Made by a program: the position numbers and the translations under genes
Assembly (NCBI GenBank): GCA_965603825.1
Contig: CBFDEM010000062.1
Coordinates: forward strand, 62,001 to 126,000
Origin: Blepharisma stoltei ATCC 30299
Lineage: Eukaryota > Protista > Ciliophora
Direction: 5' to 3'
Length of the DNA stretch: 64,000 nucleotides
Shown here: positions 54,050-59,652 of the stretch, in pieces
Numbering within the stretch: position 1 is the first letter of the stretch
Layout: every line of letters starts with the position of its first letter
Notes under the pieces: model-generated
What the model was told of the DNA's origin: nothing
Database searches by the model: none
The model's input: only the letters and a program-made list of their open reading frames with translations

Positions 54050-56740
54050 TTAAACTTCTTCTTCAGCTTCTTCTAAAGGCTTATGCAGCTCAGGATGAGA
54101 GTCCATATATTCATACCCTCTGCCGCCTTCTGCAAATTCTTGCTCTAAAACCATCAAAAGTTCTTTTAATAAATTTCCACAGGCCTGTGGGACTGGGTAA
54201 GGCAGTTTTAGTATTTCTTTTATAGTGCAGCGGATGCCTTGCCTTTGTGGGACTTTTTCCCAAAATTCTTCACTTATGGCTTCAGCTGTAAAATTGTTAG
54301 AAATTGTTTGGGCGACGATTTTTCGAACAAATGGGTGGGAATCGTGAAGGCCGAGAAGCAAAGAGCGGAAGGTAGAAGGGCCGAAGAGCCCAAGACCTTT
54401 GGCAGCTTGGGCACGGATTTGAGGGTTTTGGTCTTTGGTTAAGGCTTCGATTAGCATCAGCTGTCCTTGTGGGCCGAGAAGGACTATACATTTCATAGCT
54501 GTATCTTTTACTTCGACAGCTGGGTCGTTAAGGAATCGGAAATACAGAGGCAGCAGGCTTCTTGGCTTTAGATAAGTGATTTGGTTTTTAGCTCGCTCTG
54601 AAAGGGTGTTTAAAGCTAAAAACACTTCTTTTCTGACTGCTGGCATCCTGTCGTTAGATAGCCTGAATAAAGTTTCGACTACAAAATCAATGTTATTGTG
54701 GTAAATATTTGCTTGAGATAATGCTTTTACAGCACCAGTCCTAAGGGTGATATTAGAATTTGGCTCATGGTTCAATAAATCAATTAATAATCTTTCTCCT
54801 TGTGGCCCAAGTCTGACTATAGTTTCTGCTACAGTTCCTCTATTAATCGACCCATCTCTTAAAATCTTAAATAAAACAGGGATTGCTTTTTGAGCTATAT
54901 TTTGCCCTGTACTGGCTAATGATATACATGCAGCTGTCCTTACTTTCCAATACCCATCTTTAAGCAGCTCTATAAGCCCAGGCCCCGCTCTATAAGCAGC
55001 TGGTCCTAATCTCCCTAATGCCCATGCTGCCATAGTCCTCACCTGTGGGGAGGCATCCTTCAGTAGTTTTATTAAAAAATTCGCAGAATCCGCTGCTTCA
55101 GGCAGCCCAATAAACCCTAGTGCATAAGTACAGGTTTCTCTGACGCCCTCAAATGGGTCTTTTAGCCCTCCACACAACGCTTGTATGGCGTTTATTGAAA
55201 TATTAGGAGACTCCTCAGTTTGGGCTTCACTTACACAAGGCATTATAGGAAGATTTGGGAAAACTTCGCCTAAATCTTCTTCAGACTCTCGTTTTATCCA
55301 CCTTTGGAGACATGCTAAAAAGTCACGGGCGTTTATTTCTAATATAGCGTCGTCTTCTTCGCTTTGGACTATTACTGGGGTAAGTGGCCCTTTATAAGTG
55401 CAGATAGTCCCTGGGAAAGTTCGCTGCTCATAAGTAATTGAATCATTAATTACTCTAATTTCAAGTTGCCTAGGACGAATTGGGACTCTCCAGCACAGCG
55501 CAGCAGCACTTGCCATTCTAATTTTTGGTGCATCGCTTTGTCTCAGCAATTTTATCAGTGTTTGTTCTCCGATATTCCCACATGCCCTAATGGTACAGGC
55601 TATAAGCTGCCTATCAACTGAGCCTTCTTCCATCAAAGTTAATAAGACAGGCAATGCTCCACCTTCCCAAACTACTGAATACATACGGTTTAAAGCGGCT
55701 ACAGCTTGAGTTCTTAAGGTAGAATCAGGGCTTAATGCATCTTGGGATAAGGCTGGGACTATAATTTGCCGTTGTATAGCATTAGTTAATGCAAGTTTGT
55801 CAAGCAGCCAAATTTGTAAGTGTGGGTAGTCTTTTGAAGCGAGTCTTATTAAAGCATCGACACCATGGAATCCAAGTCTACATAGGCAAGCAAAAGCAGC
55901 TTGGTGAATATTCATGTATTCTGAGGTCTCATCGTGCACAACCATTGATACAAATAAAGGGATTTGGTCTAAGGTCATTGGATGTGGACCTAAACTTCCT
56001 ATGATATCTAGAGCACATTCAGTGAAATCTGGCTCGTGCTCGTCCCACCTCATTAAAACGTTTAGAACTTCGCCGATAATGATTTCTTTAGCGTTGTTTG
56101 TGATATTTTCTGTTTCTATTAGTTCGTGAATCCCTTGCAGCCCTGCTAATTTTATTTCTTTGCTAGGGTTTTCTAAGCAGCTACTGTATTTTGCTATTTT
56201 TTCTTCAATTGGGTATTTTTCTAAATCTTTAAACTCGCTTGATCTCCTCAAACTTTCTATACTTCTATGCAACTTATCAGCTTTTTCCACAAATGGGACA
56301 GCTTCTTCATGGTAATTTTTGAATTTTTTGGCTGTGATTAAATCAACATTTCCCTTTGTATAAAATTCTGGGGATTCTTCTCTTTGAGATATACTCATTT
56401 TATGCTGTAAAAGCTTAAGTCGCTTTTTTTGTGATGGAGACCGGACTGACAGTTCTTCATCAAAAACTTTTGAGAGAAGAACTTCTGATGGCGCAGGAAC
56501 AGAAACTGGCAAATTGTACTGGGAATTTGAAAGATATGAGTCTTTGTTGAAAAGACGTGATGATGGCTTTTGATCGCGAGAATATTTTGGTTCATATGCA
56601 GAAGCTGGCCTTTGACGGGAATAGGAGTGCTGCGCCTGAGGAGGAGACTGAGAATGGTCTTGATAAGCGTCTGGAGAGTAGTCTTCGATAGGCTGCATAT
56701 CATTTTCTTCAGCTTCTGGAGAGGAGTATTGGAAACTCAT
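54050..56740 (-). CDS. HEAT/PBS-lyase repeat protein
   Basis: Many L.D....VR..AA.ALG repeats; probable ATG at 56740. Confidence 0.85.
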   Translation of the reverse strand: MSFQYSSPEAEENDMQPIEDYSPDAYQDHSQSPPQAQHSYSRQRPASAYEPKYSRDQKPSSRLFNKDSYLSNSQYNLPVSVPAPSEVLLSKVFDEELSVRSPSQKKRLKLLQHKMSISQREESPEFYTKGNVDLITAKKFKNYHEEAVPFVEKADKLHRSIESLRRSSEFKDLEKYPIEEKIAKYSSCLENPSKEIKLAGLQGIHELIETENITNNAKEIIIGEVLNVLMRWDEHEPDFTECALDIIGSLGPHPMTLDQIPLFVSMVVHDETSEYMNIHQAAFACLCRLGFHGVDALIRLASKDYPHLQIWLLDKLALTNAIQRQIIVPALSQDALSPDSTLRTQAVAALNRMYSVVWEGGALPVLLTLMEEGSVDRQLIACTIRACGNIGEQTLIKLLRQSDAPKIRMASAAALCWRVPIRPRQLEIRVINDSITYEQRTFPGTICTYKGPLTPVIVQSEEDDAILEINARDFLACLQRWIKRESEEDLGEVFPNLPIMPCVSEAQTEESPNISINAIQALCGGLKDPFEGVRETCTYALGFIGLPEAADSANFLIKLLKDASPQVRTMAAWALGRLGPAAYRAGPGLIELLKDGYWKVRTAACISLASTGQNIAQKAIPVLFKILRDGSINRGTVAETIVRLGPQGERLLIDLLNHEPNSNITLRTGAVKALSQANIYHNNIDFVVETLFRLSNDRMPAVRKEVFLALNTLSERAKNQITYLKPRSLLPLYFRFLNDPAVEVKDTAMKCIVLLGPQGQLMLIEALTKDQNPQIRAQAAKGLGLFGPSTFRSLLLGLHDSHPFVRKIVAQTISNNFTAEAISEEFWEKVPQRQGIRCTIKEILKLPYPVPQACGNLLKELLMVLEQEFAEGGRGYEYMDSHPELHKPLEEAEEEV

Positions 56741-56868
56741 AAAATTAAATATGACGATTGAAAGTTTGCGATTCAAATTTTGAGGGGAATATTTTTAGCT
56801 AGAAAATAATTGAAATTTTACAAGAAATCTATGCAAATTATATTAGGGATAATAAAATCTGTGATTAG

Positions 56869-58137
56869 TTATGGCTGCTGCTTTATTTCTTCATTTCTTT
56901 TCGGAATTATTTGTAACCTAAGGATATCACTTTCAAAAACGCCTACTCCTGCTTGGAGCATCGCAGCCATGCATCGAGCTATATTTGTAACATCATCAAT
57001 TCCAGAATGATGCCTTCCTACGTGCTCGATTTCTAGTAAACTTATCATTCCCATCATTCCTTTTGCCATAAATGAAGGGAAAATTTTTTTGATATTCATT
57101 CAGCTATAAAAATAAGGAGCAAGCTGATAATTTTTATATTTAGCTTCTTTTTGGAGACAAGTCTTTAAATCCCAATCTCCACAAGTAAGAAACGACCATT
57201 TTTTGCTTGATAGGCCAGTTTCTTCTAAAAATTCATGAAACTTCCCCAAAGCTTCTAATAGTGGAATTCCTGCATCAACCATATTTTGAGTAATCCCAGT
57301 CAATTGTGTGCAAAAAGCTGAGAGATCTGGTACAACATCAGGCTTAATATAATAGTGAAAAGTATGGTCAATCTGCAGAGTTTTTGTATTTAAAGCTTGA
57401 ACTGGAAACTCAATAATTTCTTGGCATTTTAATTCTCCATTCTCTATACAATTTGCTTCAAAATCTAGTACTAAAAAGTAGTCTAACTCTAACGGTTTCC
57501 ATTCAAATGGTGTTTCTACTCTATCTATATAAATTTTTTTGAAATATTTTGGCGATAAAAATCCTTTAATCCCAGAGGTCAGTATCACTGAATTCGAAGA
57601 AATAAAAAATTTTACCCCATCTTGCATAGCTTTTTCTATATCAATTTCAATAAAAACAGTGCAGTTACTTCGAGCTCCGCTTATAACTTGCCCATTTTCT
57701 GGAAATCCAGGCGCGAAATGTATATGATTTCTCCTCATCCTATATAATCCCCTTTTCATTATAGTAAGCCATGATTTTTTGTCAGTACCATGGACCACCA
57801 CAGGATATATGCTAGGGTCTGTAATTTCTGTCAATAAATCTTCATCTTTTACGATATTTATGGTATGGCCTTGATTGGCTCTTATCCACTGCATTCCATC
57901 AATTTCAGCTAAATCAAATCGTTTTTTGTCATTTTCAGCGACCACTTGTTTTATATGCTCTTCAGTCCATTTAGAAAATCTTTGGTGGGCAAGTAACTCA
58001 TCGACCCTGACAAATCCTGCTGAGGTCATAGCAAGCCCAAGCTCGCCAATTCCATGTCTGAGTGCCCAAGAAAGAGATTTAGATAATTTTACCATTTCAT
58101 TATCTCCTACTCTTCGAGCTTTTCCTCTGCGGTTCAT
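56869..58137 (-). CDS. Tpt1/KptA RNA 2'-phosphotransferase fused to ERI1-family DEDDh 3'-5' exonuclease (422 aa)
   Basis: LRH, KKRF, IRANQGH, HGT, MRRNHIH; then LDFEA.C, EIIEFP, CGDWDL, YF.SW.NIKK (W=TGA), GRHHSGIDD..NIA. Confidence 0.92.
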
Positions 58138-58169
58138 TAAAAGGGTTTATTATAACAGATCATATTAGA

Positions 58170-59652
58170 TTAAAAAGATTTAGTGTAAGAAACGTTTTTT
58201 TGATAAGCTTGGTCTTCAGTTATATCGAGGGGGTTATCAGAATTAGTTAATTCTAAGTCACTTGTAGGCCTAGCTAGCTGGATGCTCATTTCTTTTATTC
58301 TTTGTTTAGCAAGTCTTGACTCGGGGTGGTTGGAGACTATAGCTAAAATTTCATGCATTTTTTCTTTTTCTATCATTACTTTGCGAGCATTTGCCCGCTT
58401 TGTGGTGATGCTGCTTTCAAGCTCACTCCTCATTGCTTTTATGCGTTTTCTGGATTCATGCTGTTTACCAAGAATATGGTCTCGTTTGGCAAGCCTAATT
58501 GTGAGTTACCATTATGCGCTTGTGCCGTTCTCGATTTGTTTGAGTGTCTCTTGTTTTTAATCTATGCAGTTCTACTTTTAGTTCTAAATTTTTATGTTTT
58601 GCTGCTTTTTTAGTTTCTAAAAGCTTTTGCAATGATTGTGCTTTTTTTTCAAAATTTTCTAGATTTTTCATAATTTCGTCATCTTTTTCTTTTAATTTTT
58701 CTTGTGCAAGTGTGAACCTTTCAAAATATTTACGTTTCGATAAATTTCTAGCTTCTTGCTGTTTCATAGCACTTTGTGCTCTTCTTTCGGTAGCCTTTTT
58801 GTGTCTGCTTATTAGCTTTATAGCAGTTTCTATAGCCTCTAAATCACTATTTTCAAACTTTTTTACATTGATTTCTGAATGTTTTCTTGAAATTTGGCTT
58901 TTTTTTCTATTTATTAGCTCATCGTGCATTCCTTTAGATTTTTCTATTTTTTTATAAATTGATGTCAGTTGTTCTTCAATTTCTTCTTCTGAAATATCTC
59001 CTGACTTAGTTTTTAACAGTTTTGTATCAGAGCGTCTGCCATTAACTGAATTAATTTTTCTACTACCAAGCAAAGAGTCAGGAGACTTCCTGATAACTGG
59101 AGACGACGATTCACTTTTTAAAGCTTCTAGAAGGCTGTTTTGTTCTTTTCTTTTGATATCTTCAATATTCCTTTTTTGCACATCTACAAACTTATTTAAT
59201 TTTGATTTTCTCAGCTTGATTTCTTTTTCTTGCAGTTTTTCTTTAATATTTCAAGCTTTTTTTAATTTTTTTTCTTTGTTTTCTCTTGCTTGAATTTCTC
59301 TTTCATAGTCATTTAGAGCATTGCAAATAATTTCTTTATGCTTTTCTTTTAATTTTTCGAAATTAAAAGATTTATTTAAAGGCTCAGGGGAGAATATGTG
59401 AAATTTTGTTTCTTTTGAGACTTTATCTAAGCTTCATCCGCGGCTTTCTTTAATTTTGTTTTTGATAAGTTTTACAGTGTCGTTTAATTTTTTAATGTAA
59501 TGATCGTATCTGAGTTTTTGGATGTCTTCATCTGCGTTTCTTTCGTAAAAATCGTCATAGGAAAGCTGGATTAGCTCTGAAGGGTCAATCCCAAGGATTT
59601 TCATTGCTGCGGAAATTTTGTGATTGTTTATGTCGATTGCATAAATTGTCAT
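58170..59652 (-). CDS. Coiled-coil protein (~488 aa if a 16-nt intron is removed)
   Basis: Frame continuous via two TGA to 58510; tiny intron at 58494/58495-58509. Confidence 0.65.

What the first reader, a model, noticed from the sequence alone, without database searches (positions are those of the whole stretch)
56869..58137. Intact Tpt1/KptA - ERI1 exonuclease fusion: candidate RNA end-healing and trimming enzyme
One ORF (hidden by a TGA-Trp at 57100) joins an NAD+-dependent RNA 2'-phosphotransferase to an ERI1-type DEDDh 3'-5' exonuclease. Both keep their catalytic residues: Tpt1 LRH, KKRF, RxxHIH and HGT; ERI D-E, D, H, D. Tpt1 removes 2'-phosphates and can ADP-ribosylate nucleic acid ends, while ERI1 trims siRNA, 5.8S rRNA and histone mRNA ends. 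Inference: the fusion couples unblocking or marking of phosphorylated RNA ends to trimming, possibly in RNA repair or in the small-RNA pathways that guide ciliate genome editing. I do not know this as a characterised architecture.
Basis: partly seen in the sequence, partly recalled or inferred. Interest (0 to 1): 0.82.

Follow-up and report, generated by a model that had tools for sequence, protein, structure and literature searches.

The report
Tpt1–ERI3 exonuclease fusion gene
This ciliate gene really does join an RNA 2'-phosphate-removing enzyme (Tpt1) to an RNA-trimming exonuclease (ERI3 type) in one expressed protein. The same fusion is widespread in protists and already sits in public databases, so the gene is an ordinary member of a common, biochemically unstudied architecture.

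Summary
Observation confirmed. Minus strand 56869-58137 is one 422-codon frame with a single in-frame TGA (57100-57102). The genome matches Blepharisma stoltei MAC, where UGA codes for Trp. The TGA falls on a Trp/aromatic residue conserved across homologues. With Trp346 the protein has a complete Tpt1 domain and a complete DEDDh exonuclease domain, and all catalytic residues are present. RNA-derived contigs from two species cover the whole ORF as one unspliced piece.

Interpretation partly supported. The exonuclease is an ERI3 orthologue, not ERI1, and it has no SAP domain. The fusion is not rare. This exact 422-aa protein is already in NCBI/UniRef. At least 77 Tpt1→exo and 7 exo→Tpt1 fusions were retrieved, from ciliates, trypanosomes, stramenopiles and a green alga. 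I found no paper that characterises the fusion.

The genome's only two Tpt1 genes are both fused. The second, which has a dead exonuclease, was noted earlier by this scan on other DNA of this genome (s1-638782). RtcB and Archease were not detected, and tRNA-Tyr genes carry an intron. The likeliest role is therefore housekeeping 2'-phosphate removal coupled to 3' trimming. Nothing links it to genome-editing small RNAs. Interest is moderate to low.

The parts
56869..58137 (-). Complete CDS of the 422-aa Tpt1-ERI3 fusion. ATG at 58135-58137, TAA stop at 56869-56871, no intron.
   Evidence: Identical to public protein P0121. An RNA contig covers 56861-58141 with 0 differences and no gaps.
57571..58098 (-). 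Tpt1/KptA RNA 2'-phosphotransferase domain (aa 14-189).
   Evidence: Pfam PF01885, 205 bits, model 2-177/177. Mouse and human TRPT1 7yw2/7yw3: E 1.5e-41 by sequence, TM 0.85-0.86 by fold.
58054..58059 (-). Codons for Arg27-His28 of the Tpt1 catalytic tetrad (LRH motif).
   Evidence: Invariant in 49 Tpt1→exo, 7 exo→Tpt1 and 48 unfused Tpt1 domains.
57919..57921 (-). Codon for Arg73 (KKRF motif) of the Tpt1 tetrad.
   Evidence: Arg in 103 of 104 aligned Tpt1 domains.
57730..57732 (-). Codon for Arg136 (RRNHIH motif) of the Tpt1 tetrad.
   Evidence: Invariant in the alignment.
56974..57474 (-). ERI3-type DEDDh 3'-5' exonuclease domain (aa 222-388).
   Evidence: Pfam PF00929, 86.5 bits, model 1-162/164 on P0121. 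Human ERI3 7k05/2xri: E 3e-45, TM 0.84-0.90. Nearest stand-alone relatives are named ERI3.
57457..57465 (-). Codons for Asp225 and Glu227 (DFE motif), the first two DEDDh residues.
   Evidence: Asp in 173/173 and Glu in 171/173 aligned exonuclease domains.
57169..57171 (-). Codon for Asp323 (last D of GDWD), the third DEDDh acidic residue.
   Evidence: Invariant in 173/173 domains.
57100..57102 (-). In-frame TGA read as Trp346.
   Evidence: Aligns with a conserved Trp/aromatic position. TGA is kept in the organism-B transcript contig and in L009. UGA=Trp is reported for B. stoltei (PMC9942806).
56992..57009 (-). Codons for His377 to Asp382 (HSGIDD), the DEDDh general base and last acidic residue. 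They lie downstream of the TGA.
   Evidence: His in 172/173 and Asp382 in 172/173 domains. Read directly from the sequence.
56861..58141 (-). Extent of the assembled transcript contig (X1 record 2, 1281 nt).
   Evidence: table 8. The neighbouring genes lie on separate contigs and the intergenic DNA is uncovered.

Best explanation
A real, expressed, intron-less gene encodes a 422-aa bifunctional RNA-processing protein. The N-terminal part is a Tpt1/TRPT1-type NAD+-dependent RNA 2'-phosphotransferase. It is joined with almost no linker (about residues 203-211) to an ERI3-type DEDDh 3'-5' exoribonuclease. It is the Blepharisma orthologue of a fusion that is widespread in protists. Shown: the ORF, UGA=Trp at a conserved Trp, both domains complete with all catalytic residues, one transcript, a confident two-domain model, and a wide distribution of the fusion in both domain orders. 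Inferred: it is the cell's housekeeping Tpt1. It would remove the 2'-phosphate left at splice junctions of intron-containing tRNAs such as tRNA-Tyr by a 5'-phosphate-type ligase, transferring it to NAD+. It is also the cell's only catalytically intact ERI-family exonuclease. The fusion would keep the two steps on one RNA, so that a 2'-phosphate, which would be expected to block a DEDDh exonuclease, is removed where 3' trimming or decay takes place. Alternatively, Tpt1 may simply deliver the nuclease to freshly ligated RNAs.
For: Gene and code. Conserved Trp at the TGA and all catalytic residues. One unspliced transcript contig in this species (56861-58141, 0 differences) and one in a related species (1292 nt, 93 differences, TGA kept); uncovered intergenic DNA and a 15-nt intron removed next door show the runs are RNA-derived. 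AlphaFold2 model with mean pLDDT 90.7 and pTM 0.85, ordered across the junction. Folds match TRPT1 and ERI3. Fusion seen 77 times as Tpt1→exo and 7 times as exo→Tpt1 among 235 fetched proteins, including Trypanosoma, Cymbomonas, Heterosigma, Discosporangium and Pseudomicrothorax. A 1533-bp contig capped by telomeric repeats at both ends in another ciliate carries only this fusion ORF. Own genome: only two PF01885 matches, both fused, and no other close ERI homologue. No RtcB and no Archease match, although the controls rang. tRNA-Tyr(GUA) genes with about 10 extra nt at the canonical intron site. Tpt1 two-step chemistry: PMC10946426.
Against: No activity has been measured. No Trl1-type ligase was found in the genome, although the Pfam models used had uninformative controls. 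Absence of RtcB rests on a six-frame HMM screen only. Coupling of the two activities on one substrate is inferred from the fusion alone. The paralogue keeps Tpt1 but has lost the exonuclease residues, so exonuclease catalysis is not obligatory for every Tpt1 function. Tetrahymena has an unfused Tpt1.
Confidence: 0.6

Rival explanations
1. The TGA is a true stop. The locus would then make a 345-aa Tpt1 with a truncated, inactive exonuclease stub, and the downstream 76 codons would be a separate small ORF or untranslated.
For: Under the standard code the frame stops at 57100-57102. Standard-code ORF callers truncated the homologues P0001 and P0002 at exactly this point.
Against: In-frame TGA is frequent in long ORFs of the window. 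The codon aligns with a conserved Trp. The downstream piece carries the conserved HSGIDD motif in frame and completes the Pfam domain. TGA at this codon is kept in three species. The deposited protein reads through it. UGA=Trp is published for this genome.
Confidence: 0.02
2. The fusion acts on ADP-ribosylated or 5'-phosphorylated nucleic-acid ends rather than on splice-junction 2'-phosphates. Tpt1 would cap or mark phosphate ends with ADP-ribose, and the ERI3 module would process or degrade the marked RNA or DNA, as part of an NAD+/ADP-ribose nucleic-acid pathway.
For: ERI3-type domains are also fused to NADAR, an ADP-ribose-related hydrolase domain, in three independent environmental proteins. 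Tpt1/TRPT1 ADP-ribosylates phosphorylated RNA/DNA ends in vitro (abstracts of PMC8053099 and PMC9458441). Animals keep both TRPT1 and ERI3 although they splice tRNA with RtcB (PMC10946426).
Against: There are no data on substrates. The genome appears to need a junction 2'-phosphotransferase and has no other Tpt1. The NADAR fusions come from short, N-terminally cut contigs of unknown organisms.
Confidence: 0.2
3. The protein works in the small-RNA pathways that guide ciliate genome editing: ERI1-like trimming of scan or guide RNAs, with Tpt1 healing their ends.
For: ERI1 trims small RNAs in animals and fission yeast (general knowledge). The organism is a ciliate with developmental DNA elimination (PMC9942806).
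Against: The nuclease is ERI3-like, not ERI1-like, and lacks a SAP domain. The same fusion occurs in trypanosomes, algae and stramenopiles, which have no genome editing. Contigs of it appear in all four same-study runs listed as holding it; the three laid each give one. It is the only intact Tpt1 and ERI gene, which points to a general role.
Confidence: 0.04
4. The fusion has no mechanistic meaning. Two housekeeping genes that were neighbours became joined, and the domains act independently on unrelated substrates.
For: Ciliate macronuclear genomes are very gene-dense, with intergenic gaps of about 30-100 bp. Tetrahymena has an unfused Tpt1, and many eukaryotes have unfused ERI3.
Against: The pair is kept together across very distant lineages and in both orders. 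Both active sites are conserved in nearly all fused forms. The junction is short and predicted to be rigid. The paralogue kept the exonuclease fold even after losing catalysis.
Confidence: 0.14

Closest known systems
Tpt1 / TRPT1 / KptA RNA 2'-phosphotransferase (Pfam PF01885; yeast Tpt1, human and mouse TRPT1 7yw3/7yw2)
   Same: Full-length domain match at 205 bits. About 41-43% identity to mammalian TRPT1. The same two-lobed fold (TM 0.85). The catalytic Arg-His-Arg-Arg residues and the HGT/HIH motifs are all present.
   Different: It carries a C-terminal exonuclease domain. The characterised Tpt1 enzymes are single-domain proteins of about 180-250 aa.
ERI3 (human ERI1 exoribonuclease 3, PDB 2xri and 7k05)
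   Same: Best solved-structure match (E 3e-45, about 42% identity, TM up to 0.90). All DEDDh residues are present. Stand-alone proteins named ERI3 from animals and other eukaryotes are 47-50% identical to this domain.
   Different: The N-terminal region is replaced by a whole Tpt1 enzyme. The physiological substrate of ERI3 itself is poorly defined.
ERI1 / 3'hExo (PDB 1w0h, 1zbh, 4l8r)
   Same: Same DEDDh nuclease fold and catalytic residues (E 1e-34, TM 0.88 to the nuclease domain).
   Different: A weaker match than ERI3. The SAP domain that ERI1 uses to bind the histone mRNA stem-loop is absent. ERI1's small-RNA, 5.8S rRNA and histone mRNA roles should therefore not be transferred.
Exonuclease→Tpt1 proteins of trypanosomes (T. 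cruzi P0085, T. cruzi marinkellei P0092, T. rangeli P0108; annotated 'putative phosphotransferase')
   Same: The same two families in one polypeptide, with both sets of catalytic residues conserved.
   Different: The domain order is reversed (exonuclease 71-253, Tpt1 346-523) with a spacer of about 90 residues. They form their own clade on the Tpt1 tree (97 SH-aLRT).
Paralogue in the same genome (G000 contig 41; L002:205-2112, minus strand; 636 aa)
   Same: 44% identical over 402 residues. Tpt1 is intact, followed by an RNase_T-like domain.
   Different: In the exonuclease, Glu227 is replaced by Lys and His377 is deleted, so it is probably inactive. It has an extra tail of about 215 residues and an Arg/Gly-rich N-terminus.

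Membership tests
Tpt1/KptA RNA 2'-phosphotransferase (PF01885) | Full-length profile match above the curated cut-off | tested here: met
   204.7-205.3 bits against a cut-off of 26, model 2-177/177.
Tpt1/KptA RNA 2'-phosphotransferase (PF01885) | Catalytic Arg-His-Arg-Arg tetrad (from my knowledge of the yeast and Clostridium Tpt1 literature) | tested here: met
   R27, H28, R73 and R136 are present and invariant across 104 aligned domains.
Tpt1/KptA RNA 2'-phosphotransferase (PF01885) | Two-lobed Tpt1 fold | tested here: met
   The AlphaFold2 model (pLDDT 90.7) matches mouse and human TRPT1 with TM 0.85-0.86 and rmsd 2.6-2.7.
Tpt1/KptA RNA 2'-phosphotransferase (PF01885) | [quoted passage not shown] | not testable with these tools
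   Needs an enzyme assay or yeast tpt1 complementation.
ERI3 subfamily of DEDDh exonucleases (PF00929) | Complete RNase_T/DEDDh domain with Asp-Glu-Asp-His-Asp | tested here: met
   86.5 bits, model 1-162/164. D225, E227, D323, H377 and D382 are present.
ERI3 subfamily of DEDDh exonucleases (PF00929) | Closer to ERI3 than to ERI1 or ERI2 | tested here: met
   PDB E-values: ERI3 3e-45, ERI1 about 1e-34, ERI2 6e-30. Every named stand-alone top hit is ERI3. No rooted tree with ERI1 and ERI2 outgroups was made.
ERI3 subfamily of DEDDh exonucleases (PF00929) | 3'-5' exoribonuclease activity | not testable with these tools
   Needs an enzyme assay.
ERI1 / 3'hExo | N-terminal SAP domain that binds RNA stem-loops | tested here: not met
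   The Pfam scan of the whole protein finds only PF01885 and PF00929. The region N-terminal to the nuclease is Tpt1.
Tpt1-exonuclease fusion architecture (PF01885 + PF00929 in one polypeptide) | Both domains in one ORF and one transcript | tested here: met
   A single frame, one RNA contig over 56861-58141, and a deposited 422-aa protein.

The most novel reading that the evidence does not exclude
ERI3-type exonucleases have become linked in three ways to NAD+/ADP-ribose nucleic-acid enzymes: Tpt1→ERI3, ERI3→Tpt1 and NADAR→ERI3. This marks a conserved eukaryotic pathway in which ERI3 trims or degrades RNAs whose ends or junctions carry 2'-phosphate or ADP-ribose. If so, animal TRPT1 and ERI3, both without a settled physiological role, would be partners. 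No paper in the searchable library mentions the two together.
Probability: 0.25. Interest if true: 0.7.

Novelty: new member of a known kind. Interest (0 to 1): 0.35.

Why it matters
For this locus the result is mainly a correction. The gene is real and intact, but it is an ordinary orthologue of a database-known fusion that is widespread in protists. It is not a ciliate-specific invention tied to genome editing.

The wider pattern has some value. Tpt1 and an ERI3-type nuclease are kept together in both orders across very distant eukaryotes, and ERI3 is also fused to NADAR. This is a classic fusion-based hint that the two enzymes share a pathway. It gives a concrete, testable idea for the unexplained retention of TRPT1 and ERI3 in animals. 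It also suggests how protists that seem to lack RtcB finish tRNA splicing.

Tried and rejected
- The 76-aa piece after the TGA gave no Pfam hit on its own. It only scores as part of the whole domain.
- Pfam models for yeast-type tRNA ligase (PF09511, PF08302, PF08303) found nothing in the genome. Their control genomes did not ring either, so this says nothing.
- The 30 best-scoring tRNA loci and six 81-nt tRNA hits held no intron-containing tRNA; the 81-nt hits were all tRNA-Ser. A short anticodon-arm pattern then found the tRNA-Tyr genes.
- BLASTP of the paralogue's C-terminal tail against the exonuclease domain was not significant (E 0.54). I therefore could not confirm a second 'tandem' pseudo-exonuclease domain.
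- Seven literature searches found no description of a Tpt1-exonuclease fusion (one search failed on syntax). Subscription journals are not covered.
- The reads tool returned only assembled contigs. Expression level, strand, transcript ends and conjugation timing could not be measured.
- The trees could not settle how many times the Tpt1→exo fusion arose. The backbone is weak, and one origin is not excluded. Several 'exonuclease-only' rows inside fusion clades are fragments or ORFs cut by standard-code calling.
- The large representative-protein search was not run, because relatives were plentiful.
- Model coordinates are not exposed, so the distance between the two active sites was not measured.

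Full report
**1. What is in the sequence**

On the minus strand, 58137 down to 56869 is a single reading frame of 422 codons. It starts at the first ATG after two stop codons and ends in TAA. It is interrupted only by TGA at 57100-57102.

The 345 residues before the TGA give a full-length Pfam PTS_2-RNA (Tpt1/KptA) match: 205 bits, model 2-177/177. They also give an RNase_T exonuclease match that breaks off at model position 113 of 164, exactly at the TGA. The 76 residues after the TGA carry the motif HSGIDD in frame.

**2. The TGA is a Trp codon**

- Long ORFs bounded by TAA/TAG across the window often contain in-frame TGA.
- The assembly has 41.46 Mb in 64 contigs. This matches the published Blepharisma stoltei ATCC 30299 somatic genome: 41 Mbp, 64 telomere-to-telomere contigs, 66% AT, UGA reassigned to Trp, and 15-16-bp introns (PMC9942806). 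The organism name is my inference from these figures.
- Residue 346 aligns with the Trp of human ERI3 in the stretch 'yfkqWinlkk'. In 173 aligned exonuclease domains the position is Trp in 143 homologues, Phe/Tyr in the remaining 27 homologues.
- The same codon is TGA in a related species' transcript contig and in a 67%-identical orthologue on another assembly, L009.
- A cluster look-up returned a 422-aa protein, P0121, held by NCBI, UniRef and nr. It equals the two pieces joined by Trp. So the gene model is already public.
- On P0121 the exonuclease domain becomes complete: model 1-162/164, 86.5 bits.

**3. Both active sites are intact**

- In an alignment of 104 Tpt1 domains, R27, H28 and R136 are invariant and R73 is Arg in 103 of 104. 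These hold in 49 Tpt1→exo fusions, 7 exo→Tpt1 fusions and 48 unfused proteins.
- In 173 exonuclease domains, D225, E227, D323, H377 and D382 are invariant or nearly so.
- His377 and Asp382 lie downstream of the TGA. Read-through is therefore required for a catalytically complete nuclease.
- An AlphaFold2 model built on 32 fusion homologues has mean pLDDT 90.7 and pTM 0.85, with high confidence across the junction. The TRPT1 alignment runs to residue 202 and the ERI3 alignment starts at 212. There is almost no linker.
- Foldseek matches the N-terminal half to mouse and human TRPT1 (TM 0.85-0.86). It matches the C-terminal half to ERI3 (TM 0.84-0.90), then ERI1 and ERI2. No solved chain covers both halves.

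**4. It is ERI3-like, not ERI1-like**

- By sequence the best solved relatives are human ERI3 (E 3e-45), ahead of ERI1 (about 1e-34) and ERI2 (6e-30).
- A search with the nuclease domain alone returned stand-alone proteins named ERI3, from molluscs, cnidarians, nematodes and others, at 47-50% identity. Naegleria also appears, under another name.
- No SAP domain, the RNA stem-loop binder of ERI1, is detected.
- The small-RNA, 5.8S rRNA and histone-mRNA roles of ERI1 should therefore not be transferred to this protein.

**5. One transcript**

Assembled contigs of three runs of one 2022 study, and of one 2015 run of a related organism, were laid on 55800-59300.

- In run X1 a 1281-nt contig covers 56861-58141 with no differences and no gaps.
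- The neighbouring genes sit on separate contigs that stop at 56696-56749 and start at 58176-58191.
- The intergenic DNA is uncovered, and a 15-nt segment is removed from the neighbouring gene at 58494. Genomic DNA would not give these features, so the runs are RNA-derived.
- The 2015 run gives a 1292-nt contig over 56847-58131 with 93 substitutions, no indels, and no listed change at the TGA. The protein from that species (P0001) is 95% identical, so most changes are silent.
- The two domains are thus on one unspliced mRNA in two species.
- Contigs cannot give expression level, strand or timing.

**6. The fusion is common**

- The word-based protein search with the first 345 residues found 988 relatives.
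- Among the 235 proteins fetched in two searches, 77 have Tpt1 followed by the exonuclease and 7 have the reverse order.
- Named Tpt1→exo examples are the ciliate Pseudomicrothorax dubius, the green alga Cymbomonas, the raphidophyte Heterosigma and the brown alga Discosporangium.
- The reverse order occurs in Trypanosoma cruzi, T. cruzi marinkellei and T. rangeli. In T. cruzi the exonuclease spans 71-253 and Tpt1 spans 346-523.
- In another ciliate the fusion ORF fills a 1533-bp contig capped by CCCCAAA/GGGGTTT repeats at both ends. This is a gene-sized chromosome carrying only this gene.
- Tetrahymena has an unfused Tpt1.
- On a Tpt1-domain tree the reversed forms are one clade (97 SH-aLRT), while the Tpt1→exo forms are scattered on a weak backbone. 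A single origin is not excluded.
- On a FastTree of the nuclease domain the reversed forms sit inside a supported clade with 11 Tpt1→exo forms. The reversed order may therefore derive from the forward one, for example by duplication and loss of the outer domains. Either way the partnership was retained.
- I found no paper that describes or characterises the fusion. The library lacks many subscription journals.

**7. Context in this genome**

- A six-frame search finds only two Tpt1 genes, and both are fused.
- The second lies on contig 41 (L002:205-2112, minus strand, 636 aa). It is 44% identical over 402 residues and keeps the Tpt1 tetrad. It has Lys in place of Glu227 and lacks His377, so its nuclease is probably dead. 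This scan had already noted it (s1-638782).
- No other close ERI homologue exists in the genome.
- RtcB and its cofactor Archease give no match, although the controls rang in 10 and 6 genomes respectively.
- Four tRNA-Tyr(GUA) genes carry about 10 extra nucleotides just after the anticodon, the canonical intron site.
- Taken together, this suggests that tRNA exons are joined by a ligase that leaves a junction 2'-phosphate, which makes Tpt1 necessary. That ligase was not found; the fungal-type Pfam models gave no usable result.
- T. brucei, which has the reversed fusion family, is known to splice tRNA-Tyr with a Trl1-type ligase (PMC4931112).

**8. How it most likely works**

Shown: a single polypeptide with a complete Tpt1 active site and a complete DEDDh active site, tightly joined.

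Established for the families: Tpt1 transfers an RNA 2'-phosphate to NAD+ in two steps through a 2'-phospho-ADP-ribosyl RNA intermediate (PMC10946426). DEDDh nucleases remove 3' nucleotides one at a time using two metal ions.

Inferred: the protein is the housekeeping 2'-phosphotransferase of the cell, and the attached ERI3 module trims or degrades the same RNAs from the 3' end. A 2'-phosphate is expected to obstruct such a nuclease, so removing it on the same enzyme would let trimming proceed. Alternatively, Tpt1 delivers the nuclease to newly ligated RNAs. I put the housekeeping reading at about 0.6 and strict same-substrate coupling at about 0.4.

An alternative tied to end ADP-ribosylation gains some weight from three independent NADAR→ERI3 fusions.

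A role in genome-editing small RNAs has no support. The fusion occurs in lineages without genome editing, and it is the only intact gene of either family in this genome.

**9. Verdict**

The architecture is common and already deposited, so this is one more member of a database-known but unstudied fusion family.

The most interesting residue is the fusion-based hint that Tpt1/TRPT1 and ERI3 work in one pathway.

Noticed in passing
L002:205-2112 (minus strand; G000 contig 41, about 115252-117159): A second Tpt1-exonuclease fusion of 636 aa. Tpt1 is intact, but the nuclease has Lys for Glu227 and no His377, so it is probably a pseudo-enzyme. It also has an Arg/Gly-rich N-terminus and an extra tail of about 215 residues. 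The tail shares only an 'FFKRWINLYK' motif with the nuclease domain (BLASTP E 0.54).
   Followed up: partly
whole genome G000: No match to RtcB (PF01139) or Archease (PF01951) in six-frame searches, although the controls rang. This heterotrich ciliate may have lost the RtcB ligation pathway. No Trl1-type ligase was identified either.
   Followed up: partly
L053:1482-1564 (also L051, L054, L055): Four tRNA-Tyr(GUA) genes of 83 nt with about 10 extra nucleotides right after the anticodon. This is a short canonical-position tRNA intron. By contrast, the tRNA-Ile(UAU) genes in L023 and L024 have none.
   Followed up: partly
proteins P0141, P0159, P0182: Environmental eukaryote-like proteins with a NADAR domain fused in front of an ERI3-type exonuclease. 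They form one clade next to the Naegleria ERI3-like protein. This is a second link between ERI3 and ADP-ribose chemistry. P0187 carries a zf-AN1 finger instead.
   Followed up: partly
window 58494-58509, minus strand: One RNA contig (X1) lacks 15 nt here. If the deletion is placed at 58495-58509, it is a canonical GT...AG 15-nt intron in the coiled-coil gene upstream. Contigs of two other runs end at or run into this spot unspliced.
   Followed up: partly
L012:1-1533: A complete gene-sized chromosome of another ciliate, capped by CCCCAAA/GGGGTTT repeats at both ends. It carries only a 445-aa Tpt1-exonuclease ORF (85-1422).
   Followed up: partly
window 54050-56776 (minus strand) and L009:3930-4077: The 908-aa HEAT-repeat gene downstream of the fusion also has a HEAT-repeat counterpart downstream of the 67%-identical orthologue in L009. 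In L009 one extra gene lies between them. This suggests partly conserved gene order.
   Followed up: no
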